From contig NC_068994.1 of the NCBI RefSeq assembly GCF_001194135.2, positions 49,787,174 to 49,829,978 of the forward strand: DNA of 42,805 bases. The letters run 5' to 3'. Below, in pieces: positions 1,373 through 39,072 of the stretch (the stretch's first letter is position 1; each line of letters opens with the position of its first letter). This DNA is from Octopus bimaculoides (Eukaryota). The position numbers and the translations under genes were made by a program. The notes below the pieces were generated by a model. The model saw only the letters and a program-made list of their open reading frames with translations. It did no database searches and was not told where the DNA came from.

Positions 1373-1580
1373 TTTAGTTCCAGGTTAGTTCTGATTGAAC
1401 AGTGCAATGATTAAAGGCACTCCAGCCGTGAACATCATGTTTTCATGTAGTATCATCATTATCCAATTATTATTATTTTTTTTTATTTACGATAGCTCAC
1501 AAGTGATTTCAGTGTGATTTCGTTGCTATTTCTAACAACCCGAGCGACCACGTAGTCACCTTCGTTTGTGCTTCCGCCCA
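1373..1580 (-). mobile_element. Family C short element (HDV-like head), near full length
   Basis: TTTAGTTCCAGGTTAG...AAAGGCACTCCAGCCGTGAACATC...GTGTGATTTCGTTGCTATTTCTAACAACCCGAGCGACCACGTAG; same module order as the other copies. Confidence 0.75.
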
Positions 1581-6709: not shown

Positions 6710-7004
6710 TGTCAGTTATTGTTTTGTTATTTAATGTTCGTTATTGTTTGTTATATACTACCATCGTTTCTTGGGACATCTTTTCAGTTTGTGTGTGTAT
6801 GTATGTATGTATGTATGTATGTATGTATGTGTGAGTGTGTATGTATGTATGTGTGTATGTATGTATGTATGTATGTATGTGTGTATGTATTTATGTGTCT
6901 ATCTATCTATCTATACACACAAACACACATGTATATTTATCTTCATCTGCCTGTCTGCCTATTTCTATATATGTATGTCTGTCAGGCTGTCTATTTCGTA
7001 TGTG

Positions 7005-7036
<32 letters not shown>

Positions 7037-7219
7037 CACACACACAAACACGTGTATATACACGCATTGATACATCCATATAGATTGATTGATGTATACA
7101 TCCATTCACAACGAACACATGTCTATATGGATCGGGCTGTCACCGTGCCTCTTGCTATGTATACATGTCCCTGTGTATATAATACCAGTGAACATATGCG
7201 GTGGTTATACTTGCTATTA

Positions 7220-11600: not shown

Positions 11601-12669
11601 TCCTTCTATCACAGCTTATCACTGTGACCACTTATTTAATATCTAAAGGACAAAGATAGATAGATAATGAGAAATAGAGAGAGGGAATGTGACGGGGTGA
11701 GGGGGATTAGTGCTATGCGTATCTTCTCTGAGTTCAATCCCGGCTCGGGAACGGGAGCTTGAATTTTTCTTTTTTTCTCATCTTTTTTGCCTTATTATTT
11801 ATAGTTTCCCATTGCTCTCATAAAGAAACAAAACCCTTTATTATATTCTAATNNNNNNNNNNNNNNNNNNNNNNNNNNNNNNNNNNNNNNNNNNNNNNNN
11901 NNNNNNNNNNNNNNNNNNNNNNNNNNNNNNNNNNNNNNNNNNNNNNNNNNNNNNNNNNNNNNNNNNNNNNNNNNNNNNNNNNNNNNNNNNNNNNNNNNNN
12001 NNNNNNNNNNNNNNNNNNNNNNNNNNNNNNNNNNNNNNNNNNNNNNNNNNNNNNNNNNNNNNNNNNNNNNNNNNNNNNNNNNNNNNNNNNNNNNNNNNNN
12101 NNNNNNNNNNNNNNNNNNNNNNNNNNNNNNNNNNNNNNNNNNNNNNNNNNNNNNNNNNNNNNNNNNNNNNNNNNNNNNNNNNNNNNNNNNNNNNNNNNNN
12201 NNNNNNNNNNNNNNNNNNNNNNNNNNNNNNNNNNNNNNNNNNNNNNNNNNNNNNNNNNNNNNNNNNNNNNNNNNNNNNNNNNNNNNNNNNNNNNNNNNNN
12301 NNNNNNNNNNNNNNNNNNNNNNNNNNNNNNNNNNNNNNNNNNNNNNNNNNNNNNNNNNNNNNNNNNNNNNNNNNNNNNNNNNNNNNNNNNNNNNNNNNNN
12401 NNNNNNNNNNNNNNNNNNNNNNNNNNNNNNNNNNNNNNNNNNNNNNNNNNNNNNNNNNNNNNNNNNNNNNNNNNAATAATAATAATAATAATGATAATAA
12501 CAGATCAGTTAAAAAACTGGGGTCGATGGTTCCGACTCATCCCTTTCCTTTAAAATTGCTGTTCTTTGTGCCTTAGAATCTGACCATTTTTATTCTAAGA
12601 GCCCGAAAAATTTTCAAAGCCCTTGTGTCTGCTTCGATGTCTGTAAACGATTATTTTAAATAAGACATT

Positions 12670-12800
12670 CGTGTTCGAATCTCGCCGCTCCCGTCTTTTG
12701 TCTTTCAAACCTTTTCCTCGGATACCAGTCATGTACTGCGGTCAGTTATGCGAACTTTCCTCCACCAAGACTATACCCCCTCCCCTCTCTTCCATCCACC
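12670..12800 (+). mobile_element. Decayed family D SINE fragment
   Basis: GTTCGAATCTCGCCG...TTGTCTTTCA...GATACCAGTCATGTACTGCGGTC aligns loosely with the 17798 copy. Confidence 0.45.
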
Positions 12801-13260
12801 CCATTTTGCTCGCTTCGCTCTTAGAATCGAAGAATTATTATTTAAAACTGGAAAAAAAATAATAATGACTGTAAACAATAACAAGAGATGTTGATATTGG
12901 TGAAGTAGGGTTTTTGTGATGATGATGATGATGATGATGATGGTGATGATAGGGGTAATGTTGATAATGATGATGGGTGATGGGTGCTGACGGAAAAAGC
13001 TTTCTAAACGCGCCTAGCAAAACCATGAACCTCACAACACGTTTTACCCCGCCAAAAAAGANNNNNNNNNNGGAGAGTTTTGATCCCGTTTGAAAGAAAT
13101 AAAGGGTTAAGGTTAGAGGGACGACTTTGCAGACAGACAGACAGAAAAAGGGGCTCCTTTGTCTGCTGGTGGTCGTCGTCGTAGCCATAGTAGTAGTAGT
13201 AGTAGTAGTAGTAGCTGTGATGGGGCCTGGCTCATCGTGGTGGTTATACGGTTAGGGATC

Positions 13261-13460
13261 TTTTTGTTCGGGTCGGTTACGCTTGTACTGTCAGCTTTTG
13301 ATCGGACATTCCAGCCATGACCATCTCGCACTGAAGTGTTTTGCAAGTCTTGGAGACTAACTACGTTGTTAGTTGTTTCGGTCAGTAGGGTAAATAAATT
13401 GAGGGAGATTTTGGTTGCTATTTCTAGCAGATCGAGCGTCCATGTAGAGGCATCGCCCCT
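13261..13460 (-). mobile_element. Family C short element with the best-preserved HDV-like head
   Basis: GATCGGACATTCCAGCCATGACCATC...GAGGGAGATTTTGGTTGCTATTTCTAGCAGATCGAGCGTCCATGTAGAGGCATCGCCCCT. Confidence 0.8.
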
Positions 13461-13548
13461 TAGCTGGTGATGTCGGTGGTGATGGTGGTAGTGGCGGTAG
13501 TGGTTAATGGCAGTGTTTGGTATTACGATGGTAGGACACATGCTGGCT

Positions 13549-13780
13549 GTTGTTTTCCCCCCTCACAGCTCACGTCCATGTTGGCGCTGAGCGAGCAGAC
13601 CCGTGATCGAAACCACTCCAGCTGTGACCATCATGCCTTCCGTTTTTAAACGGTGTTGTATGGTAACTGCGTTATCTAACGTGTTCGTTCTCTCCTTATT
13701 TAAGACGGCCATGGAGCGGGCTGAGGGAAATTTGGCTGCTATTTCAAGCAAGCAAGCCGAGCGACCAGAAGCCCCCCCAT
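13549..13780 (-). mobile_element. Family C short element
   Basis: GAGCAGACCCGTGATCGAAACCACTCCAGCTGTGACCATC...TTTAAGACGG...GAGGGAAATTTGGCTGCTATTTCAAGCAAGCAAGCCGAGCGACC. Confidence 0.8.
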
Positions 13781-14999
13781 GTCAGCTCAGGTGCTGTGTG
13801 GTAATAGTGAGGAGGCTTTGTTTCAGTTAGCGGTATGTCGATATATATATATATATATGTCATCATTTATTGTTGNNNNNNNNNNNNNNNNNNNNNNNNN
13901 NNNNNNNNNNNNNNNNNNNNNNNNNNNNNNNNNNNNNNNNNNNNNNNNNNNNNNNNNNNNNNNNNNNNNNNNNNNNNNNNNNNNNNNNNNNNNNNNNNNN
14001 NNNNNNNNNNNNNNNNNNNNNNNNNNNNNNNNNNNNNNNNNNNNNNNNNNNNNNNNNNNNNNNNNNNNNNNNNNNNNNNNNNNNNNNNNNNNNNNNNNNN
14101 NNNNNNNNNNNNNNNNNNNNNNNNNNNNNNNNNNNNNNNNNNNNNNNNNNNNNNNNNNNNNNNNNNNNNNNNNNNNNNNNNNNNNNNNNNNNNNNNNNNN
14201 NNNNNNNNNNNNNNNNNNNNNNNNNNNNNNNNNNNNNNNNNNNNNNNNNNNNNNNNNNNNNNNNNNNNNNNNNNNNNNNNNNNNNNNNNNNNNNNNNNNN
14301 NNNNNNNNNNNNNNNNNNNNNNNNNNNNNNNNNNNNNNNNNNNNNNNNNNNNNNNNNNNNNNNNNNNNNNNNNNNNNNNNNNNNNNNNNNNNNNNNNNNN
14401 NNNNNNNNNNNNNNNNNNNNNNNNNNNNNNNNNNNNNNNNNNNNNNNNNNNNNNNNNNNNNNNNNNNNNNNNNNNNNNNNNNNNNNNNNNNNNNNNNNNN
14501 NNNNNNNNNNNNNNNNNNNNNNNNNNNNNNNNNNNNNNNNNNNNNNNNNNNNNNNNNNNNNNNNNNNNNNNNNNNNNNNNNNNNNNNNNNNNNNNNNNNN
14601 NNNNNNNNNNNNNNNNNNNNNNNNNNNNNNNNNNNNNNNNNNNNNNNNNNNNNNNNNNNNNNNNNNNNNNNNNNNNNNNNNNNNNNNNNNNNNNNNNNNN
14701 NNNNNNNNNNNNNNNNNNNNNNNNNNNGTTTGATGGACTTAGCTTCTTAAACTACTTTACTCGTTATTTTAAATAAACGATGCGTTTGTTAATTTTGCGA
14801 GATAAAAGAAAGAAAAAGAGTCTCTCACATACATACATACATACATACATACATACATACATACATACAAATAATATATGAGTATATGCGTATATACGTA
14901 CGTGTATGTACATACCTACATCTACATGTATATATTAGATGCATGTCTGGGTACAGGACGTTGCAAACAAAACGTGGACAAAATGATAAACGGAATACA

Positions 15000-15031
<32 letters not shown>

Positions 15032-15816
15032 CACATCTATATAAACATGAGTGTATATATGTACATGTGACTACACACACACATTTTGTACCTGCATGCA
15101 CACACGTGTGTATCTATGTTTGTATATACGCGCTTCCACGTGCCAGCATGCATATCCATACGAAAAAAAAGGGTCCCCCGTCGGTTTTCACGACGAGTAT
15201 TTTCAGTAGTTTGATCATCTGAGCTATAGCTATTCATCGAACTATTGTTTACGCATGTCAGTGGCCGAGTACTCCGCGCACACATTTTTTTTTACTCGTA
15301 ATATAGTTAGTTATGATTGTGCATAGTCAGTTTGACACGCTGTTCGTACGACAATGAATAAATGATAGGAAGTGGACTCAGTCTGACCGGCTTCCGTGCA
15401 GTTTCCCTTCTACTCACGAGGTCTGAGCGTGTGGGTGGTTGGGTGGGTTGACACGGAAATGAGTAAAAAGCACTAATGCCCATGATATACACACACAAAC
15501 GGTACTTTCGAAGCCATTGCCGTCTTTGTTACGAAGAGTTCTCAAGACTCGACCATGTCTTTTTCGTCTGAGCACACACACACACTGTGACACTCACGCA
15601 CGCACACACACACGCATACACAAACGCGCGCGCACGTTTTAAAACGGGAGAACATGTTTATTATACATAAACAGCCACTGCCTGATATGTCAGACCAGTC
15701 TGTGAGCGCGCGCGCGCGTGTATATGTGAGCCTGTGTTACTGCATATGTGTGTGTGTGTGTGTGTGTGTATGTGAAAGTCATGTACTTTATACATATAAA
15801 ACGGAATATTTATATA

Positions 15817-15867
<51 letters not shown>

Positions 15868-16591
15868 GCGAAATTATAAGGATCTTTTTGGACGCTGACT
15901 AATGAGGAATTAATTACGAATTTTCCGTTTGTTTTGTTTTTGTTAATTTTTTCATATATATATATATATATTTATAAAATAAGGATTTAATCAAAAAATA
16001 ATTATACCAGTGGCCTAGTGCGTTCGACCTGTGGTTGAAATCAAGAACATGTCTTAGAGTGGATTATAGGTATTTGACATCTACTTCTAGCCTAGGCTGC
16101 TGGTCTCTTCCAGTAGCCCTTAATTATAATTATATTTAACAGTTAGGTTTTTATATATTTATATATATCCACCTTAAATACCTTATCGTTATGCGCGCGC
16201 GCGTATATATATATATATATATATATATTGTGTATAATGTTTGGTTATGACCATGGGAATATGTTCACACACACACACACACACGTATATATATACATGC
16301 ATTTATGTGTAGTATATATATGTAAATGTGTGTGTGTGTCCAATGATATGTTTATATAGCTATATCGACGCACGGACGTTCGCGCACGCACACACCTATT
16401 TTGCGAACAAAGCAATCACGTGCTTAACAGCAAAACGTGCTCGAATATATATAAGCATGTTTACATGTAAAATGCATTTATGTACCATGCGCTTAGCGTG
16501 CATGTGCTAAAGTTGCTGTTTGTTTTTGTACTTTTTGCGCGCACACACACACACACACATACATACGTACATACATACATGCATTGTGCCT

Positions 16592-16657
16592 GAGAGGGAT
16601 CGTGTATGTGGTCGTGTTTCAACCTGCTGAAAATAGCAGCCAAATCCTTTGGTCACA
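16592..16657 (+). mobile_element. Family C head fragment
   Basis: GAGAGGGATCGTGTATGTGGTCG...ACCTGCTGAAAATAGCAGCCAAATCCTTTGGTCACA. Confidence 0.65.
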
Positions 16658-16715
16658 GGCCACTCCATATGCGTTAATCTGCAATACGCGAACAGACACG
16701 CTCATGTGTTCATGC

Positions 16716-16930
16716 TGTTTAGGCCCAGGTCAACACTAATGTAAAAGACCTTTGATCAAAGGCGTTCTGGCCGTGACCATTGCGTCTTTTTTTTTTAGTG
16801 GGTTTGGGTGTGGGAAAGGGTTATTGTTCAGGACTGCCTCACCTTATTTTCTCACCGATTTTTCTTCGTCTTTTGAAGACAGTAACAGAATGTGATTTGG
16901 GGGTTTATTTCTAGCACGCCGAGCGACTAT
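16716..16930 (-). mobile_element. Family C short element, near full length
   Basis: TGTTTAGGCCCAGGTCA...TTTGATCAAAGGCGTTCTGGCCGTGACCATT...TGTGATTTGGGGGTTTATTTCTAGCACGCCGAGCGACT. Confidence 0.75.
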
Positions 16931-17210
16931 TGCGTCTGTACGCGTTTACGCCCGAATTCGTGTCAATATATTCATGGGTTCCTAGGTGGAGACTGCTTGG
17001 AACAAGGTGTAAACTTCCGACCCAGTTCCACCTCTTTGTTCGTTCAAGTTCAACCTACCTGTATTTGTGACACCGATGATTACTCTTGCGGAAAAGCATG
17101 AACATCGACTCTTCCCGTTTCCTGCCACGCCTTTCCTAACGTGCGTGTACGTGTGTGTATGTGTATATTATTGAAGGACTAGTGGCCCATGGACTCATAA
17201 ATAAGAATGA

Positions 17211-17430
17211 TTTCAAATTTTGGCACAAGGCTTGCAATTTTAGGGTAGCGGGTAAGTCGATTACATCGACCCCGTTGTTCAACTAGTACTTAATTTATCG
17301 ACCCCTAAAGGATGAAAAGAAAAGCTAAACTGAGCAGTATTCAAGTTTAGCGCGCAAAGAACCGGAAGACATACCATTAAGCATTTTGTCCGACGCACAA
17401 ACGTTTCTGGTTCTGACAGCTTGCCGCCTT
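17211..17430 (-). mobile_element. tRNA-headed SINE, family D
   Basis: Minus strand starts AAGGCGGCAAGCTG and contains GGGGTCGATAAATTAAGTACTAG and GGGGTCGATGTAATCGACT. Confidence 0.8.
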
Positions 17431-17797
17431 AGAGAAAGAAAATTGATATAATTTCGCTTTATTTTGTTGGGGGTTAGGGGCCTAATTCTTCGTTGCAGCA
17501 CTAGGGCCCCATGAATACTTTATAAATCACCTGGGTTACATCGGTTTTGCTCCTTTGCCCCAGCCACGATTCGACCTGGTTATATCACCAAACTCTTGCT
17601 TGGGATAGAGTTTATCTCTCACATGGCGGATGAGTGACAGCGAAAGTGGGGCCGCTGTTTCTCTAGAACTAAGCTGATTGACTGCATTTCCAACCCTCAG
17701 CCACCCTGTGGAATGTTGTATCTCTGGTGAATATTAAGAATGTTTTGATGGCAATATACTGAAGGCAATAGTTTTTATTTTAATATTTTTATCAGTC

Positions 17798-18030
17798 AAG
17801 GCGGCGAGCTGACAGAAACGTTAGCATGCCGGATGAAATGCTTAGCGGTATTCTGTCTGTCTTTACGTTCTGAGTTCAAATTCCGCCGAGGTCGACTTTG
17901 CCTTTCATCCTTTCGGTGTCGATAAATTAAGTACCAGTTACGCACTGGGTTCGATGTAATCGACTTAATCCCTTTGTCTGTCTTTGTTTGTCCCCTCTAT
18001 GTTTAGCCCCTTGTGGGTAATAAAGAAATA
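17798..18030 (+). mobile_element. Family D SINE, full length, tail type 1
   Basis: AAGGCGGCGAGCTGACAGAAACGTTAGCA...GAGTTCAAATTCCGCCGAGGTCGACTTTGCCTTTCATCCTTTCGG; B-box-like GAGTTCAAATTC; tail GTTTAGCCCCTTGTGGGTAATAAAGAAATAA. Confidence 0.85.
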
Positions 18031-18235
18031 AGAAACGTTAGCGCGCCTGACGAAATGCTTAGCGGTATTCCGTCTGTCTTTATGTTCTGAGTTCAAATTC
18101 CGCCGAGGTCGACTTTGCCTTTCATCCTTTCGGGGAATCGATAAATTAAGTACCAGTTGCATACTGGGGTCGATCTAATCGACTGGCTCCCTCTCCAAAA
18201 ATCTTGGGCGTTGTGTCTATAGTAGAAAAGAGTAT
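18031..18235 (+). mobile_element. Family D SINE, slightly 5'-truncated, tail type 2, abutting the previous copy
   Basis: Near-identical body to 17798; tail CTGGCTCCCTCTCCAAAAATCTTGGGCGTTGTGTCTATAGTAGAAAAG. Confidence 0.85.
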
Positions 18236-18280
18236 TTCTGTCAGTAGTCTGTCTGTCTGTCTGTCTGTCTGTATGTATGT

Positions 18281-18381
18281 ATTCTTTTACTTGTTTCAGT
18301 CACTTGACTGCGGCCATGCTGGAGAACGGCCTTTCGTCGTGCAAATCGACCCCAGGACTTATTCTTTGTAAGCCTAGTACT
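18281..18381 (-). mobile_element. Family A 3' tail fragment
   Basis: Reverse complement of AGTACTAGGCTTACAAAGAATAAGTCCTGGGGTCGATTTG...CCAGCATGGCCGCAGTCAAGTGACTGAAACAAG. Confidence 0.8.
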
Positions 18382-18420
18382 TGAAAACGGCCGAAATGTT
18401 GCTAAGAGTTTTTGTCCCGG

Positions 18421-18482
18421 GTGCTCAGCATGGCCGCAGTCAAGTGACTGAAACAAATAGAAGAATAAAAGAGTAAAAGAAT
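18421..18482 (+). mobile_element. Family A 3' tail fragment, inverted relative to 18281-18381
   Basis: CAGCATGGCCGCAGTCAAGTGACTGAAACAAATAGAAGAATAAAAGAG. Confidence 0.8.
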
Positions 18483-18861
18483 GCGAATGATGCTGTCCTC
18501 CTTGTACAGGGGAACCTCTGATTAGGGCCAATCGAGGAACAGCCGTAGTTCCAAGATTATCCAAGATTAACCCCCGACAGCGAAAAGCCCGTAAAAATTC
18601 TAACGTTGAGACCCCCAAGGCCAGAGGATTGCAACGATCCCACTATTTCGAGTGGTAACTTCATTTTATCAGACCCTGGAAAGAGGTGAAGAGAAAATAG
18701 GCTGAGGAAAGATTTGAACTATCAATCGCAAGGTGTTTTGACTCTTAGAGCCCTTATGAATTCTGCAGATCTATAATAAATACATGTTGTACATACATAC
18801 ACACTCATATTGGAATCGGTGGACTGCCGTCACACAAACGCCCGCGCACGCACATATATAT

Positions 18862-19240
18862 AGGCGCAGGTGTGTGGTAAGAATTGTGCTTCCCAACTAA
18901 TATGGTTCTGGGTTCTTGTACAAGCATCTTCTACTATATAGCCATGGACCAAGTAAAGCCTTGTGAGTGGATTTGGTAGACGGAAACATACATACATACA
19001 TACGTGTGTTTGTGTTTGACCATCCCCGCCCCACATCTTGACAATCGGTGTTGGTTTGCTTACGTCCCTGTAACTTAGCAGTTCGGCAAAAAAGAGTCAG
19101 ACAGAATAAGTACCAGGTTTGAAAAGAAAATAATTACTCGGGTCGGTTTATTCGACTAAAAAAAAAAAATGTACAAGGTGGTGCTCCAGCATGGCCGCAG
19201 TCTAATGACTGAAACTAGTAAAATAAAATATAAAAAGAAT
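18862..19240 (+). mobile_element. Family A SINE, full composite (head, internal microsatellite, module, tail)
   Basis: AGGCGCAGG-TGTGTGGTAAG...GTGAGTGGATTTGGTAGACGGAAAC-(ATAC)n-...CTTGACAATCGGTGTTGG...GTGCTCCAGCATGGCCGCAGTC. Confidence 0.85.
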
Positions 19241-19268
19241 ATATATACTATATATGTGCATATATGGT

Positions 19269-19573
19269 GGAGGCGCGTTGGCTTAGGGGCGTAAAGTCGT
19301 GAGTTCAATTCCCGGCGACACGTTGTGTCCTTGAGCAAGACACTTTATTTCACGTTGCTCCAGTGCATTCAGCTAGTAAAAATGAGTAGACACTGTATTT
19401 CAAAAAGGGCCAGCATTGTCATACTCTGTGTCACGCTGAACCTCCCCGAGAACTACGTTAAGGGTACACGTGTCTGTGGGGTACTCAGTCACTTGCACGT
19501 TAACATCACTAGCAAGCTGTTCCGTCGATCGGATCAATTAGAACCCTCGTCGTCGTGACTGACGGAGTGCCAC
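19269..19573 (+). mobile_element. tRNA-headed SINE, family E, CORE-like central domain
   Basis: GGAGGCGCGTTGGCTTAG head, GAGTTCAATTCC B-box, then TGTGTCCTTGAGCAAGACACTTTATTTCACGTTGCTCCAGT...TAAAAATGAG, resembling the CORE consensus TGTGACCTTGGGCAAGTCACTT...TGTAAAATGGG as I recall it. Confidence 0.75.
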
Positions 19574-19619
19574 TATCTGCTATATATGTATGTGTATGTA
19601 TGTATGTACTTGTGTGTGT

Positions 19620-19651
<32 letters not shown>

Positions 19652-20606
19652 GTACGAGAAAGGTCAAAAACAAAAAGAAAATAAAAATGCCTGCATATAT
19701 TAACCTACATTCGATATGTGGATGATACATACATGGACAACACAACATGGTTCAATCTATAATAAACACACATGTGTTTATGCTTGTGTGCACATGTGCA
19801 ACATNNNNNNNNNNNNNNNNNNNNNNNNNNNNNNNNNNNNNNNNNNNNNNNNNNNNNNNNNNNNNNNNNNNNNNNNNNNNNNNNNNNNNNNNNNNNNNNN
19901 NNNNNNNNNNNNNNNNNNNNNNNNNNNNNNNNNNNNNNNNNNNNNNNNNNNNNNNNNNNNNNNNNNNNNNNNNNNNNNNNNNNNNNNNNNNNNNNNNNNN
20001 NNNNNNNNNNNNNNNNNNNNNNNNNNNNNNNNNNNNNNNNNNNNNNNNNNNNNNNNNNNNNNNNNNNNNNNNNNNNNNNNNNNNNNNNNNNNNNNNNNNN
20101 NNNNNNNNNNNNNNNNNNNNNNNNNNNNNNNNNNNNNNNNNNNNNNNNNNNNNNNNNNNNNNNNNNNNNNNNNNNNNNNNNNNNNNNNNNNNNNNNNNNN
20201 NNNNNNNNNNNNNNNNNNNNNNNNNNNNNNNNNNNNNNNNNNNNNNNNNNNNNNNNNNNNNNNNNNNNNNNNNNNNNNNNNNNNNNNNNNNNNNNNNNNN
20301 NNNNNNNNNNNNNNNNNNNNNNNNNNNNNNNNNNNNNNNNNNNNNNNNNNNNNNNNNNNNNNNNNNNNNNNNNNNNNNNNNNNNNNNNNNNNNNNNNNNN
20401 NNNNNNNNNNNNNNNNNNNNNNNNNNNNNNNNNNNNNNNNNNNNNNNNNNNNNNNNNNNNNNNNNNNNNNNNNNNNNNNNNNNNNNNNNNNNNNNNNNNN
20501 NNNNNNNNNNNNNNNNNNNNNNNNNNNNNNNNNNNNNNNNNNNNNNNNNNNNNNNNNNNNNNNNNNNNNNNNNNNNNNNNNNAACAGGAATACCACCACC
20601 AGGACA

Positions 20607-27569: not shown

Positions 27570-27774
27570 CTATATGATTAAGTGATCGTCGATATTCCTT
27601 CCATGGCCATCCAGTCGTATTTTTTCTTCACATCTATTCAGTTAAGGTCCATATCGAATGATGTTTTTTGTTATAAATTTTAGTCTGTTAGGGTGTGTGT
27701 TTTAAGGAAAATTTGACTGCTATTTCTAGCAGGTCGAGCGGCCGGCTACGTAGTTAGTCGCTCGACCTGTTAGA
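27570..27774 (-). mobile_element. Family C element ending in a head-to-head palindromic junction
   Basis: AGGGTGTGTGTTTTAAGGAAAATTTGACTGCTATTTCTAGCAGGTCGAGCG...CGCTCGACCTGTTAGA. Confidence 0.65.
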
Positions 27775-28440
27775 GTAGTGGTGGTGGTGGTGGTGGTGGT
27801 GGTGGAGGTGGTGGTTGGAGTTGTAGTGCTAGCATACTTGTTTGCAAAGGCAATATTCATGTCGATTGTCATATTGGTAGCGGTGTTAGTGCGAAGTGGT
27901 AGTCGTTGCAGAGGTGTTGACAGTAGTATATATGCCATTAGTGCACATAGCAGTCGTAGTAGTGGTGATGGTGGTGGNNNNNNNNNNNNNNNNNNNNNNN
28001 NNNNNNNNNNNNNNNNNNNNNNNNNNNNNNNNNNNGCAGGTCGAGCGGCCGGCTACGTAGTTAGTCGCTCGACCTGTTAGAGTAGTGGTGGTGGTGGTGG
28101 TGTCAGTGGTTTGTAAGTGTTGCCGTTGCTGCCGTGCTTGTGTTGTTTTTCGTTGGCCTTCAGGGGTGGTTGATACTGTTTTGTAGAGGGGAGGGGGGGG
28201 CGTTGGTGTTGGTGGTGACGGTAGCGTGGGTATTTTGTGGTACTGCTGTCTCTGCTGCTGTTGCTGCTGCTGCTGTTGTTGTGTGTAGTATGCGTTCGCA
28301 TTCTGATCTGCATTTCATGCACACCCTAATTTTCATCGCTTTCTCCACTCTCTGTGTGTGTGTGTAGATACATACATACATACATACATGCATATATACA
28401 TACATGCATATATACATACATGCATATATACATACGTACA

Positions 28441-31992: not shown

Positions 31993-32124
31993 AAAGCGGC
32001 GAGCTGGCCGTGTCGTTAGCACGTCGGGCGAGATGCTTTACGTTCTGGGGTTCAAATTCCGCTATGATCGATTATGCTTTTTTTTTATACCTTTGGGGTC
32101 GATAAATTAAGTACTAGTGAAACA
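31993..32124 (+). mobile_element. Family D SINE with internal deletion, truncated by a gap
   Basis: AAAGCGGCGAGCTGGC...GGGTTCAAATTCCGC...GGGGTCGATAAATTAAGTACTAG. Confidence 0.8.
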
Positions 32125-33042: not shown

Positions 33043-33195
33043 TCTAGGACGACATTGTCACATTGTCCACCGACGTGTCCTTTTCCTGTATTATTTCTCT
33101 CTCTCTCTCTCTCTCTCTAAGACAGTTAAGGGTGTGTGATTTGAGAGAGATTTGGCTGCTATTTCTAGGAGAAGGAGGAGGTCGAGCGACCCTGC
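33043..33195 (-). mobile_element. Family C element (head half)
   Basis: TAAGACAGTTAAGGGTGTGTGATTTGAGAGAGATTTGGCTGCTATTTCTAG-[GAGAAGGAGGA insert]-GGTCGAGCGACC. Confidence 0.7.
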
Positions 33196-34076
33196 CCAAG
33201 CTGTTTTCGTTTACATGCCTGCAATGTACATCTCCTCTTCCTCACTCTCTTTNNNNNNNNNNNNNNNNNNNNNNNNNNNNNNNNNNNNNNNNNNNNNNNN
33301 NNNNNNNNNNNNNNNNNNNNNNNNNNNNNNNNNNNNNNNNNNNNNNNNNNNNNNNNNNNNNNNNNNNNNNNNNNNNNNNNNNNNNNNNNNNNNNNNNNNN
33401 NNNNNNNNNNNNNNNNNNNNNNNNNNNNNNNNNNNNNNNNNNNNNNNNNNNNNNNNNNNNNNNNNNNNNNNNNNNNNNNNNNNNNNNNNNNNNNNNNNNN
33501 NNNNNNNNNNNNNNNNNNNNNNNNNNNNNNNNNNNNNNNNNNNNNNNNNNNNNNNNNNNNNNNNNNNNNNNNNNNNNNNNNNNNNNNNNNNNNNNNNNNN
33601 NNNNNNNNNNNNNNNNNNNNNNNNNNNNNNNNNNNNNNNNNNNNNNNNNNNNNNNNNNNNNNNNNNNNNNNNNNNNNNNNNNNNNNNNNNNNNNNNNNNN
33701 NNNNNNNNNNNNNNNNNNNNNNNNNNNNNNNNNNNNNNNNNNNNNNNNNNNNNNNNNNNNNNNNNNNNNNNNNNNNNNNNNNNNNNNNNNNNNNNNNNNN
33801 NNNNNNNNNNNNNNNNNNNNNNNNNNNNNNNNNNNNNNNNNNNNNNNNNNNNNNNNNNNNNNNNNNNNNNNNNNNNNNNNNNNNNNNNNNNNNNNNNNNN
33901 NNNNNNNNNNNNNNNNNNNNNNNNNNNNNNNNNNNNNNNNNTCAAAGGACATAGTAAGTATGTCTACCTGCGGGAAATAGCAGTCAAAACTCTTATTTAA
34001 ATCGCCAAAATACACTGATGATAACTACAGAAATCAACCGAAGGCAGATCAGGTTAATAAAATCTCCTACACACAC

Positions 34077-38859: not shown

Positions 38860-39069
38860 TAGCAAATATGGGGCCAGCAGTTTTTGACGAGAGGAGGAAG
38901 ATTCCATCAACCCTAATAAACTTGACTTGGTACTTATTTTAATCCACGTCGAAGGGGGATAAAGGGCTAAGTCGAATTCAACGGAATTCGAACTCCGAGC
39001 ATAAAGACGGACGAAATGCCGCTAAGCATTTTGGCCGGCGTGCTAAAGGTTTCTTGCCAGCTCATTGCC

Positions 39070-39072
<3 letters not shown>
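38860..39072 (-). mobile_element. Family D SINE
   Basis: Minus strand AAGGCAATGAGCTGGCAAG...CACGCCGGCCAAAATGCTTAGCGGCATTTCGTCCGTCTTTATGCTCGGAGTTCGAATTCCG. Confidence 0.75.

What the first reader, a model, noticed from the sequence alone, without database searches (positions are those of the whole stretch)
13401..13460. HDV-like (nested double pseudoknot) ribozyme architecture at the head of an abundant non-tRNA element
Seen: this copy's minus strand reads AGGGGCGAT-GCC-TCTACAT-GGA-CGCTC-GA-T-CTGCTA-GAAA-TAGCAA-CCAAA-ATCTCCCTC, with P2 pairing GGGGCGAT/ATCTCCCT at 7/8. Across copies (1512, 13723, 16592, 27075, 27710, 33140, 40200) my by-eye consensus is P2-GCC-TCTACGT-GGT-CGCTC-G(G/A)-C-YTGCTA-GAAA-TAGCA-GCCAA-ATCTCCCTC. 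P4 substitutions mostly preserve pairing (TTGTTA/TAGCAA, TTGCTA/TGGTAG), and the 16592 copy has an alternative P2 (AGGGAT/ATCCTT). Known: HDV-like ribozymes run P1-P2-P3-L3-P3-P1-GG-P4-(G)CNAA-P2 with a catalytic C, and sit at the 5' ends of R2, RTE and L1Tc retrotransposons and their non-autonomous derivatives. The insect R2 core as I recall it (CC-UCCUCGU-GGU...GG...UGCUA...UAGCA-GCUAA) is strikingly similar. Inference: a high-copy cephalopod SINE-like element headed by a self-cleaving ribozyme instead of a tRNA promoter. Caveats: the P1 3' strand is only 5-6 nt (canonically 7), the P1 5' strand is not firmly located, no copy here is intact, and I cannot check whether this is already described.
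Basis: partly seen in the sequence, partly recalled or inferred. Interest (0 to 1): 0.85.

Follow-up and report, generated by a model that had tools for sequence, protein, structure and literature searches.

The report
Ribozyme-like head of octopus repeat
The flagged 60 bases are one worn-out copy of a very abundant octopus short retroelement whose first ~75 bases, once a family consensus is rebuilt, fit the fold of a hepatitis-delta-like self-cutting RNA; this is a plausible but unproven new example of a known way for mobile elements to trim their own 5' ends.

Summary
It belongs to a real, abundant repeat: at least 18 copies in about 33 kb of resolved window, and 5 orthologous copies in each of three Octopus genomes.

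The element is about 330 nt long. The motif sits at its 5' end, the 3' end is A/C-rich, and (CTA)n/(CCA)n microsatellites flank both sides. Copies often lie head-to-tail.

The majority-rule consensus fits the HDV-like order and spacing:
- P2: 9 bp.
- P3: 3 bp.
- L3: 7 nt.
- P1 3' strand followed by GG.
- J1.1/4: 1 nt.
- P4: 6 bp with a GAAA loop.
- J4/2: CCAA.
- The 5'-terminal SAGCKAC can pair with the P1 3' strand over 5-6 bp.

The consensus passes a relaxed descriptor that hits shuffled windows only 0.03 times each.

Against this:
- No real copy passes the descriptor, and the focal copy folds no better than shuffles.
- Covariation is not significant.
- No Rfam family matches.
- P1 is short and its first base is ambiguous.

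Verdict: these are relics of a non-autonomous retroposon that probably (about 0.55) carried an HDV-like ribozyme at its 5' end. That makes it a new member of a known kind, and cleavage is untested.

The parts
13461..13466 (-). Candidate P1 5' strand at the 5' terminus of the focal copy (CAGCTA; family consensus SAGCKAC)
   Evidence: In this copy only 3 of 5 positions pair with CGCTC.
13452..13460 (-). P2 5' strand (AGGGGCGAT; consensus GAGGGRGAT)
   Evidence: It pairs 7/9 with 13401-13409.
13439..13451 (-). P3 hairpin: GCC, L3 TCTACAT, GGA (consensus GCC TCTACGT GGT)
   Evidence: L3 is among the best conserved segments (0.79-0.93). P3 is 2/3 paired in this copy.
13432..13438 (-). P1 3' strand CGCTC followed by the P1.1 dinucleotide (GA here; GG or GA, about evenly, in the family)
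13415..13430 (-). P4 hairpin CTGCTA GAAA TAGCAA
   Evidence: P4 is 82% paired across copies, and the GAAA loop is 0.92 conserved.
13410..13414 (-). J4/2 CCAA(A). The candidate catalytic C is at 13414.
   Evidence: The first position is C in 18 of the 23 aligned copies (0.78); the C-N-A-A pattern is 0.78-0.96 conserved.
13401..13409 (-). P2 3' strand ATCTCCCTC
13253..13400 (-). Rest of the focal element: body, conserved 3' block (13296-13328, ATGGTCAYGGCTGGAATG..GATCA) and A-rich end (GAACAAAAAG)
13170..13252 (-). 3' flank with the (CTA)n/(CCA)n-type microsatellite tail
13601..13790 (-). Upstream tandem neighbour (copy c13739). Its core is at 13709-13783 and its 5' end reads GAGCTGAC.
27580..27765 (-). 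Copy c27720: GAGCGAC at the 5' end and a perfect 10-bp P1-like inverted repeat, but P2/P3 5' strands deleted. First of three head-to-tail copies (27720, 27381, 27085).
16589..16673 (+). Copy c16627 with the alternative P2 (GAGAGGGAT/ATCCTTTGG, 7/9 paired)
1490..1566 (-). Copy c1526 (P4 TTGTTA/TAGCAA; P2 GAAGGTGA/ATCACACTG)
33124..33203 (-). Copy c33159. It ends about 130 nt downstream in an A12 run.

Best explanation
The flagged stretch is one decayed copy of an old, very abundant octopus non-autonomous non-LTR retroposon of about 330 nt.

Its first ~75 nt most likely encoded an HDV-like self-cleaving ribozyme. This step is inferred. The element has no recognisable promoter-derived head, so it would be transcribed by read-through from host transcripts or from an upstream copy. 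The ribozyme would fold co-transcriptionally and cut just 5' of P1. That would free an element RNA starting at its own first base. A partner LINE's reverse transcriptase would then copy that RNA from the 3' block and its A/C-rich or microsatellite tail into (CTA)n/(CCA)n-type microsatellites, often next to older copies.

Shown: the repeat family, its anatomy, its orientation, its microsatellite context, and the HDV-like topology of the consensus.

Inferred: catalysis, the exact cleavage site, and the partner LINE (Dong/R4-clade or RTE are candidates).

The copies in this window are relics and almost certainly inactive.
For: 1. The consensus has the full HDV-like order, with zero-length junctions where the fold needs them:
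   - P2 (9 bp) runs straight into P3 (3 bp).
   - L3 is 7 nt.
   - P3 3' strand, then CGCTC, then GG.
   - A 1-nt linker, then P4 (6 bp, GAAA loop).
   - CCAA, then the P2 3' strand.
   The nested part (P2, P3, P4) is the minimum-energy fold of the consensus. The consensus folds with z = -3.1.
2. The consensus passes a relaxed descriptor that hits dinucleotide-shuffled windows 0.033 times per 33 kb on both strands.
3. The motif lies at the element's 5' end.
   - The 3' ends are A/C-rich, and one ends in A12.
   - Some copies are 5'-truncated but keep the 3' half.
   - The upstream junctions are variable.
4. The 5'-terminal consensus SAGCKAC is complementary to the P1 3' strand.
5. L3 and J4/2 are better conserved (0.79-0.93 and 0.86) than the P2 strands (0.55 and 0.65).
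6. Derived G.U pairs outnumber A.C by 32 to 19, which favours this strand.
7. There are precedents:
   - Dong, which inserts in (TAA)n, and also R4, RTE, baggins and L1Tc carry ribozymes that cleave at their 5' ends.
   - R2 SIDEs keep only the ribozyme and the 3' UTR (PMC3774820).
   - Non-autonomous SINEs with HDV-like ribozymes are mentioned in PMC6765202.
   - Dong-R4 LINEs and 'unclassified' SINEs are abundant in Octopus (PMC13282606).
Against: - No real copy passes the descriptor.
- The focal copy and c16627 fold no better than shuffles (z = -0.9 and -0.7).
- Covariation is not significant:
  - 73.2% of cells are paired against 70.9% in shuffles (18 of 500 shuffles reach it).
  - The covariation score is reached by 34 of 500 shuffles.
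  - Cognate versus non-cognate strands give P = 0.31 for P2 and P = 0.28 for P4.
- No Rfam HDV-like family matches, even at E<=10.
- P1 is only 5-6 bp. Its first base is C in 4 of 7 copies, and its fifth is T in two and C in one of six.
- About half the copies have GA instead of GG at P1.1.
- The most conserved stretch includes the P4 loop and P4 3' strand, which HDV-like catalysis does not require.
- The 5' half of the consensus rests on only 6-13 decayed copies and on an alignment curated by eye.
Confidence: 0.55

Rival explanations
1. The ~75-nt head is a conserved structured domain that is not catalytic. It could be a binding site for the partner LINE's protein, a transcription or stability element, or a shared 'core domain' of a SINE superfamily. 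On this view it resembles the HDV-like topology only by coincidence of three nested helices.
For: - The best conserved stretch is TAGAAATAGCAGCCAAAT, that is the P4 loop, the P4 3' strand and J4/2. It is conserved even in copies that lack P1-P3.
- Covariation is not significant.
- No Rfam ribozyme model matches.
- SINE superfamilies with conserved central domains of unknown function are known (PMC4824008, PMC4758252).
Against: - The domain is at the 5' terminus, not central.
- The junction lengths, the CNAA after P4, the GG after a strand complementary to the 5' terminus, and the low descriptor false-positive rate are all unexplained by a generic structured domain.
Confidence: 0.25
2. The motif is the reverse complement of the 3' terminal stem-loops of a SINE that reads on the other strand and ends in a (TGG)n/(TAG)n tail.
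For: - A (CAC)n/(CTA)n microsatellite lies directly upstream of the motif in at least 7 copies.
- The reverse strand also folds. Its energy for the consensus is -31.6 kcal/mol with z = -3.3.
- LINE-mobilised SINEs often end in a hairpin plus a microsatellite.
Against: - The opposite end of the element is A/C-rich (TAAACAACAA-type, and A12 in c33159), as expected of a 3' tail on the ribozyme strand.
- Copies that lack the outer half of the motif keep the rest of the element. That is 5' truncation on the ribozyme strand, but would be an unusual 3' truncation on the other.
- The junction with the microsatellite is variable rather than precise.
- Derived G.U pairs outnumber A.C by 32 to 19 on the ribozyme strand.
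- Neither strand has a tRNA-like head.
Confidence: 0.08
3. There is no selected structure. The resemblance is a chance property of a purine-rich/pyrimidine-rich repeat and of a consensus assembled by eye from decayed copies.
For: - Non-cognate P2 and P4 strands pair almost as well as cognate ones (0.62 against 0.64, and 0.82 against 0.83).
- Individual copies are no more stable than shuffles.
- The descriptor also hit a (TG)n tract.
Against: - The correct register is 73% paired, against 32-50% when the partner strand is slid.
- The head is far better conserved than the rest of the element across copies that are otherwise barely alignable.
- The consensus folds with z = -3.1.
Confidence: 0.1

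Closest known systems
Dong and R4 (R4-clade site-specific LINEs) with 5' HDV-like ribozymes
   Same: - The ribozyme sits at the extreme 5' end and cleaves at the junction with the upstream target.
- Dong inserts into a trinucleotide microsatellite, (TAA)n, and its ribozyme releases the upstream repeats (PMC3774820).
- The element here is likewise embedded in trinucleotide microsatellites.
- Dong-R4 LINEs are abundant and recently active in Octopus (PMC13282606).
   Different: - The element here is short and non-coding.
- Its microsatellite is (CTA)n/(CCA)n.
- It shows no sequence similarity to the Dong 5' end quoted in that paper.
- No partner LINE was found in the sequence available.
R2 SIDEs (short internally deleted elements) of Drosophila
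   Same: They are non-autonomous elements that keep only a 5' HDV-like ribozyme and a 3' region recognised by the LINE machinery (PMC3774820, PMC3414825).
   Different: - SIDEs are rDNA-specific, low in copy number and clearly derived from a known R2.
- The element here is dispersed, has a very high copy number, and its parent is unknown.
L1Tc/NARTc and SIDER retroposons of trypanosomatids (Pr77/L1TcRz)
   Same: A 5' terminal ~77-nt HDV-like ribozyme is shared by autonomous and high-copy non-autonomous elements (PMC3185411, PMC4035085).
   Different: - That family is in a different phylum and has a different sequence.
- Pr77 is also an internal promoter, and no promoter evidence exists here.
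- L1TcRz activity is demonstrated, whereas here it is untested.
[quoted passage not shown]
   Same: These are promoter-less retroelements freed from read-through transcripts by a 5' HDV-like ribozyme. The pattern of conserved downstream and variable upstream sequence is the same (PMC6765202).
   Different: - Neither Rfam's HDV-like families nor any other Rfam ribozyme family matches.
- P1 is 5-6 bp here rather than the usual 7.
Schistosoma Sm-alpha and other hammerhead-bearing SINE-like tandem repeats; retrozymes
   Same: They are short non-autonomous elements, often in head-to-tail arrays, in which a ribozyme cuts unit-length RNA out of multimeric transcripts (PMC6765202).
   Different: - The ribozyme class is different (hammerhead).
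- Adjacent copies here are no more alike than distant ones, so these arrays arose by separate insertions rather than duplication.

Membership tests
HDV-like (delta-like) self-cleaving ribozymes | Nested helices in the order P2-P3-L3-P3'-[P1']-P4-P4'-J4/2-P2', with P3 stacked directly on P2 | tested here: met
   Met by the family consensus: P2 9 bp, P3 3 bp, L3 7 nt, P4 6 bp. It is the MFE fold of the consensus without the 5' strand. The correct register is 73% paired across 23 copies, against 32-50% when slid. No single decayed copy meets it fully.
HDV-like (delta-like) self-cleaving ribozymes | P1 pseudoknot: the first ~6-7 nt after the cleavage site pair with the strand that directly follows P3' | tested here: inconclusive
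   The 5'-terminal consensus SAGCKAC can pair with (GU)CGCUC over 5-6 bp. It is seen in 6-7 copies, and 81% of cells are paired. Position 1 is C in 4 of 7 copies; position 5 is T in two and C in one of six. No variation is available to test covariation. R2 ribozymes have P1 of 6-7 bp, and one active example has 4 (PMC3774820).
HDV-like (delta-like) self-cleaving ribozymes | P1.1: one or two G directly after P1' that pair with L3 | tested here: inconclusive
   GG (about half the copies) or GA follows CGCTC. L3 positions 2-3 (C, U) could give C-G plus U.G. 71% of cells are paired.
HDV-like (delta-like) self-cleaving ribozymes | Catalytic cytosine at the first position of J4/2, with the junction ending in A (C-N-R-A) | tested here: met
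   J4/2 is CCAA in the consensus. The first position is C in 0.78 of 23 copies, and the two A are 0.96 and 0.91 conserved. The position rule is taken from PMC10879173.
HDV-like (delta-like) self-cleaving ribozymes | Compensatory base changes that support the helices | tested here: inconclusive
   The covariation score is 0.090 against 0.079 in shuffles (34 of 500 reach it). Seventeen cells changed on both sides, against 11.8 expected (35 of 500). The permutation of cognate strands is not significant. The copies are few and decayed.
HDV-like (delta-like) self-cleaving ribozymes | Match to a curated covariance model | tested here: not met
   No Rfam 15 family matches at the gathering score over the whole window. 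No ribozyme family matches at E<=10 around three copies. These models are narrow and do not model pseudoknots.
HDV-like (delta-like) self-cleaving ribozymes | Mg2+-dependent self-cleavage 5' of P1 that is abolished by C-to-U at J4/2 | not testable with these tools
   This needs in vitro transcription and cleavage of the consensus.
Ribozyme-terminated non-LTR retroposons (R2/R4/Dong/RTE/L1Tc type and their non-autonomous derivatives) | The ribozyme sits at the extreme 5' end of the element, with unrelated sequence upstream | tested here: met
   Similarity between copies starts at SAGC. The upstream sequence is unrelated or microsatellite. Orientation is set by the A/C-rich and A12 3' ends and by 5'-truncated copies.
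Ribozyme-terminated non-LTR retroposons (R2/R4/Dong/RTE/L1Tc type and their non-autonomous derivatives) | 5' and 3' ends shared with an autonomous partner LINE | not tested
   No LINE with this head or tail is present in the ~115 kb of octopus-type sequence available. The one RTE fragment next to a copy (L082 23248-23526) is absent from the O. bimaculoides orthologue, so it is an unrelated later insertion.
tRNA-, 5S- or 7SL-derived SINEs | A head derived from a pol III-transcribed small RNA | tested here: not met
   ARAGORN finds no tRNA. Rfam at E<=10 over 12475-19804, which holds four copies, gives no tRNA, 5S or 7SL match; its only snRNA line is a weak U6 hit (15.2 bits, E 5.9, at 18465-18515) that overlaps none of the copies.

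The most novel reading that the evidence does not exclude
Much of the 'unclassified SINE' fraction of octopus genomes consists of promoter-less elements headed by an HDV-like ribozyme. (SINEs make up about 12% of O. vulgaris, and most of the recently active SINE families are unclassified.) These elements would home into each other's microsatellite tails. They would be expressed only by read-through followed by self-cleavage, giving unit-length RNAs that might circularise. That would be a SINE strategy not based on pol III, operating at genome-shaping scale.
Probability: 0.15. Interest if true: 0.8.

Novelty: new member of a known kind. Interest (0 to 1): 0.5.

Why it matters
If the ancestral head was an active ribozyme, one of the most abundant repeats in octopus genomes spread without a promoter of its own. 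It would have used read-through transcription plus self-cleavage, as Dong, R4, RTE and R2 SIDEs do. In this window it has 18 copies in 33 kb, about three times as many as the tRNA-type SINE.

That would:
- Give a concrete classification for part of the large 'unclassified SINE' fraction of octopus genomes.
- Point to a microsatellite-targeting partner LINE.
- Add a mollusc and cephalopod lineage to the HDV-like ribozyme family.
- Predict many self-cleaving sites inside octopus introns and non-coding RNAs.

It does not change what is known about how such ribozymes work.

Tried and rejected
1. Rfam at gathering score over the whole window, and at E<=10 around the copies, gave nothing relevant; the hits were only microsatellite-driven miRNA noise.
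2. A metagenome scan for TAGAAATAGCAGYCAAAT gave 81 matches. All were chance, and none had the flanking motif.
3. I tried to fish octopus contigs with a chimeric translation of the consensus. It returned 12 word candidates and none scored.
4. I searched paper full text for the motif and for HDV-like ribozymes in octopus. There were 0 hits. Two SINE-superfamily papers hold no supplementary text.
5. An RTE-like ORF fragment lies next to a copy in O. vulgaris. I considered it a possible partner LINE or an internally deleted parent. I rejected this because the fragment is missing from the orthologous O. bimaculoides interval. Using it as a protein query first timed out and then found no shared words.
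6. The by-eye 'double compensatory' changes in P2 and P4 do not survive permutation and only marginally exceed shuffles.
7. The descriptor scan of the real window found no family copy. Its single hit, at 6988-7057 (-), lies in a (TG)n tract and is an artefact.
8. I tested whether head-to-tail arrays arose by tandem duplication. I rejected this because neighbours are no more alike than distant copies.
9. I looked for a tRNA-like reading of the 3' block on either strand. ARAGORN and Rfam do not support it.
10. A squid-like rhodopsin locus (L085, 21 kb) contains no copy.

Full report
**1. The observation**

- AGGGGCGAT GCC TCTACAT GGA CGCTC GA T CTGCTA GAAA TAGCAA CCAAA ATCTCCCTC

The window is a gappy eukaryotic assembly with 9,723 N in 42,805 bases, and it is full of microsatellites.

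A profile built from twelve copies finds 18 in the window:
- Twelve have E-values from 6e-14 to 5e-8.
- Six weaker ones lie at 1794, 33961, 27381, 21189, 16929 and 42429.

An 18-mer of the motif is expected 0.01 times by chance.

**2. What the repeat is**

- First comes ...AAATCACACACCCTTAACTGTCTTAGAAAG(A)nGGACACGTTGG...
- A second conserved block, ATGGTCAYGGCTGGAATG..TTGATCA, follows 90-230 nt after the motif. It has 11 profile hits at E <= 1.2e-5 and two weaker ones; all but one of these 13 pair with a motif copy.
- Then comes GTCTGCTCG..TCAG..GCTGACCTGGGGYTAAAC.
- The element ends in an A/C-rich stretch (AACAACAAAC-type). One copy, c33159, ends in A12.
- Beyond that lie (CTA)n/(CCA)n microsatellites.

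Upstream of the motif the copies share nothing. What lies there is again a (CAC)n/(CTA)n-type microsatellite in at least seven copies, joined at variable distances.

Some copies lack the upstream half of the motif. Two of them keep recognisable downstream sequence: c24719 keeps the 3' block, and c36154 keeps the segment just after the motif. In c20815 no 3' block was found, and c33961 abuts an assembly gap.

[quoted passage not shown] - The 5' junctions are variable.
- Some copies are 5'-truncated.

They also place the motif at the element's 5' end.

Neither strand has a tRNA, 5S or 7SL head.

Copies are clustered and often head-to-tail:
- 13739 then 13418.
- 27720 then 27381 then 27085.
- 20815 then 21189.

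Neighbours are no more alike than distant copies. These arrays are therefore separate insertions next to older copies, not duplications.

**3. Where the family occurs**

I retrieved the rhodopsin locus of Octopus vulgaris, O. bimaculoides and O. sinensis, 24 kb each. Each contains the same five orthologous copies. The family is therefore octopodid and older than the split of these species.

A squid-like rhodopsin locus has none.

All copies are very diverged from one another.

Octopus repeat surveys report the following, and none of the papers found mentions a ribozyme:
- SINEs make up about 12% of the genome (PMC13282606).
- Most recently active SINE families are 'unclassified' (PMC13282606).
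- Dong-R4 is the most numerous recently active LINE group (PMC13282606).
- An earlier survey assigned octopus SINEs mainly to tRNA-Core and tRNA-Deu (PMC8967140).

**4. The fold**

A 23-copy alignment was curated by segment and submitted with N in place of gaps, so that MAFFT kept it unchanged. Its majority consensus is:
- SAGCKAC GAGGGRGAT GCC TCTACGT GGT CGCTC GR C CTGCTA GAAA TAGCAG CCAA ATCTCYCTC

This has every element of an HDV-like ribozyme, in the right order and with the right junction lengths:

| Element | In the consensus |
|---|---|
| P2 | 9 bp, running straight into P3 |
| P3 | 3 bp |
| L3 | 7 nt |
| After P3' | CGCTC, immediately followed by GG |
| J1.1/4 | 1 nt |
| P4 | 6 bp with a GAAA loop |
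| J4/2 | 4 nt, starting with C and ending AA |
| After J4/2 | P2 3' strand, immediately |

Without the 5' strand, the minimum-energy fold of the consensus is exactly P2 + P3 + P4. The consensus folds with z = -3.1.

The first bases of the element in six to seven copies are:
- GAGCGAC
- GAGCTGAC
- CAGCGAG
- CAGCTAA
- CAGCTTG
- CAGCCAC
- GAGCTGC

These complement (GU)CGCUC over 5-6 bp.

A 5-6 bp P1 is within the known range. R2 ribozymes have P1 'typically 6 or 7 bp', and one active ribozyme has 4 (PMC3774820).

I wrote a relaxed descriptor with these requirements:
- P1 at least 5 bp.
- P2 at least 6 bp.
- P3 of 3 bp.
- L3 of 7-8 nt.
- P1.1 of 2 pairs.
- P4 at least 4 bp.
- J4/2 of the form C-N-R-A.

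The descriptor accepts the consensus. It hits dinucleotide-shuffled windows only 0.033 times each.

The unpaired L3 (0.79-0.93) and J4/2 (0.86) are better conserved than the P2 strands (0.55 and 0.65). Derived G.U pairs outnumber A.C by 32 to 19 on this strand (p = 0.046, though the cells are not independent).

**5. What does not fit, or cannot be shown**

- No real copy passes the descriptor. Its only hit in the window is a (TG)n artefact.
- The focal copy is a relic:
  - P1 is 3/5 paired, P3 2/3, P4 5/6 and P2 7/9.
  - It has GA at P1.1.
  - It folds no better than shuffles, with z = -0.9.
- Covariation is weak:

| Measure | Observed | Shuffled | Shuffles reaching it |
|---|---|---|---|
| Cells paired | 73.2% | 70.9% | 18 of 500 |
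| Covariation score | 0.090 | 0.079 | 34 of 500 |

  The tool itself warns that such values arise without any structure. Swapping strands between copies hardly lowers pairing (P = 0.31 for P2 and 0.28 for P4).
- No Rfam HDV-like model matches.
- The first base of P1 is C in four of seven copies.
- Copy c27720 has a perfect 10-bp P1-like inverted repeat but has lost P2 and P3.
- The single most conserved stretch is the P4 loop, the P4 3' strand and J4/2. P4 is the part that HDV-like catalysis needs least.
- The 5' half of the consensus rests on few copies and on an alignment made by eye.

**6. Mechanism proposed**

The element has no head of its own, so it would be transcribed by read-through from a host transcript or from the copy upstream. 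The head would fold and cut just 5' of P1. A partner LINE would then copy the freed RNA from its 3' block and tail into trinucleotide microsatellites.

Each step has a validated precedent (PMC3774820, PMC3414825, PMC3185411, PMC4035085, PMC6765202):
- Dong inserts in (TAA)n, and its ribozyme releases the upstream repeats.
- R4, RTE, baggins and L1Tc have ribozymes that cleave at their 5' ends.
- Non-autonomous derivatives keep the ribozyme: R2 SIDEs, NARTc and SIDER.

The last of these reviews already states that some non-autonomous SINEs use HDV-like ribozymes.

I put the probability that the ancestral head was an active HDV-like ribozyme at about 0.55. The rivals are:
- A structured but non-catalytic head: 0.25.
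- A chance resemblance: 0.10.
- The antisense 3' tail of a SINE: 0.08.

**7. Novelty and verdict**

This is a new member of a known kind. It is a candidate, not a demonstrated ribozyme. It lies in a lineage (cephalopods) and at a copy number where, as far as the searchable literature shows, it has not been described.

It is worth a genome-wide follow-up and a simple cleavage assay. It is not a new mechanism.

Noticed in passing
window 17253-17430 (-), 17798-17973 (+), 18031-18192 (+), 32036-32118 (+), 38928-39071 (-); also L082 23990-24260 (-): A second, unrelated SINE family with a tRNA-like head (GGCGGCGAGCTGRCAGAAWCGTTAGCAYGC...GAGTTCAAATTCCGCCGAGGTCGAC). It has about 5-6 copies in the window, roughly a third as many as the ribozyme-like family. 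Neither ARAGORN nor Rfam flags it as tRNA.
   Followed up: partly
window-wide: {1526, 1794}, {13418, 13739}, {16627, 16929}, {20815, 21189}, {27085, 27381, 27720}, {33159, 33961}, {36154, 36571}, {42429, 41992}: Copies of the family come almost always in clusters of two or three within a few hundred bases. The arrangements are head-to-tail, head-to-head and tail-to-tail, and all are tied to (CTA)n/(CCA)n/(CAA)n tracts. This suggests insertion into microsatellites or into the tails of older copies.
   Followed up: partly
window 27736-27790 and 28036-28095: The 5' half of copy c27720 plus its (TGG)n flank is repeated almost exactly just after the N gap at 27978-28035. This is either a local duplication or an assembly artefact around the gap.
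   Followed up: no
L082 23248-23600 (O. vulgaris), same in L084 (O. sinensis); absent between L083 19507 and 19750 (O. bimaculoides): A 5'-truncated RTE-like LINE fragment sits between two copies of the family in O. vulgaris and O. sinensis only. It carries the ORF end ...GRGRPRTRWLDTIKSDTG... and a 3' UTR ending in (GATA)n. It is a lineage-specific insertion or deletion.
   Followed up: partly
L082 18558-18910 (-): Fragments of a mariner/Tc1-like transposase ORF (…NSSDCNPLGYYMWGAVERE…) lie downstream of the rhodopsin gene.
   Followed up: no
window 6988-7057 (-): A (TG)n/(CA)n tract satisfies the relaxed HDV-like descriptor purely through G.U pairing. Microsatellites are a source of false positives for such descriptors.
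   Followed up: yes
L083 12288-12361 (-) versus L082 12205-12264 (-): The copy inside the rhodopsin intron keeps its P2/P3/L3 part in O. bimaculoides. It has lost that part in O. vulgaris and O. sinensis.
   Followed up: no
L085 (ENA ERZ21867824, contig ctg122970l, 450 kb): A record filed as a metagenome assembly carries a cephalopod-type rhodopsin that is 78% identical to octopus. It therefore appears to be host (probably decapodiform) genomic DNA.
   Followed up: no
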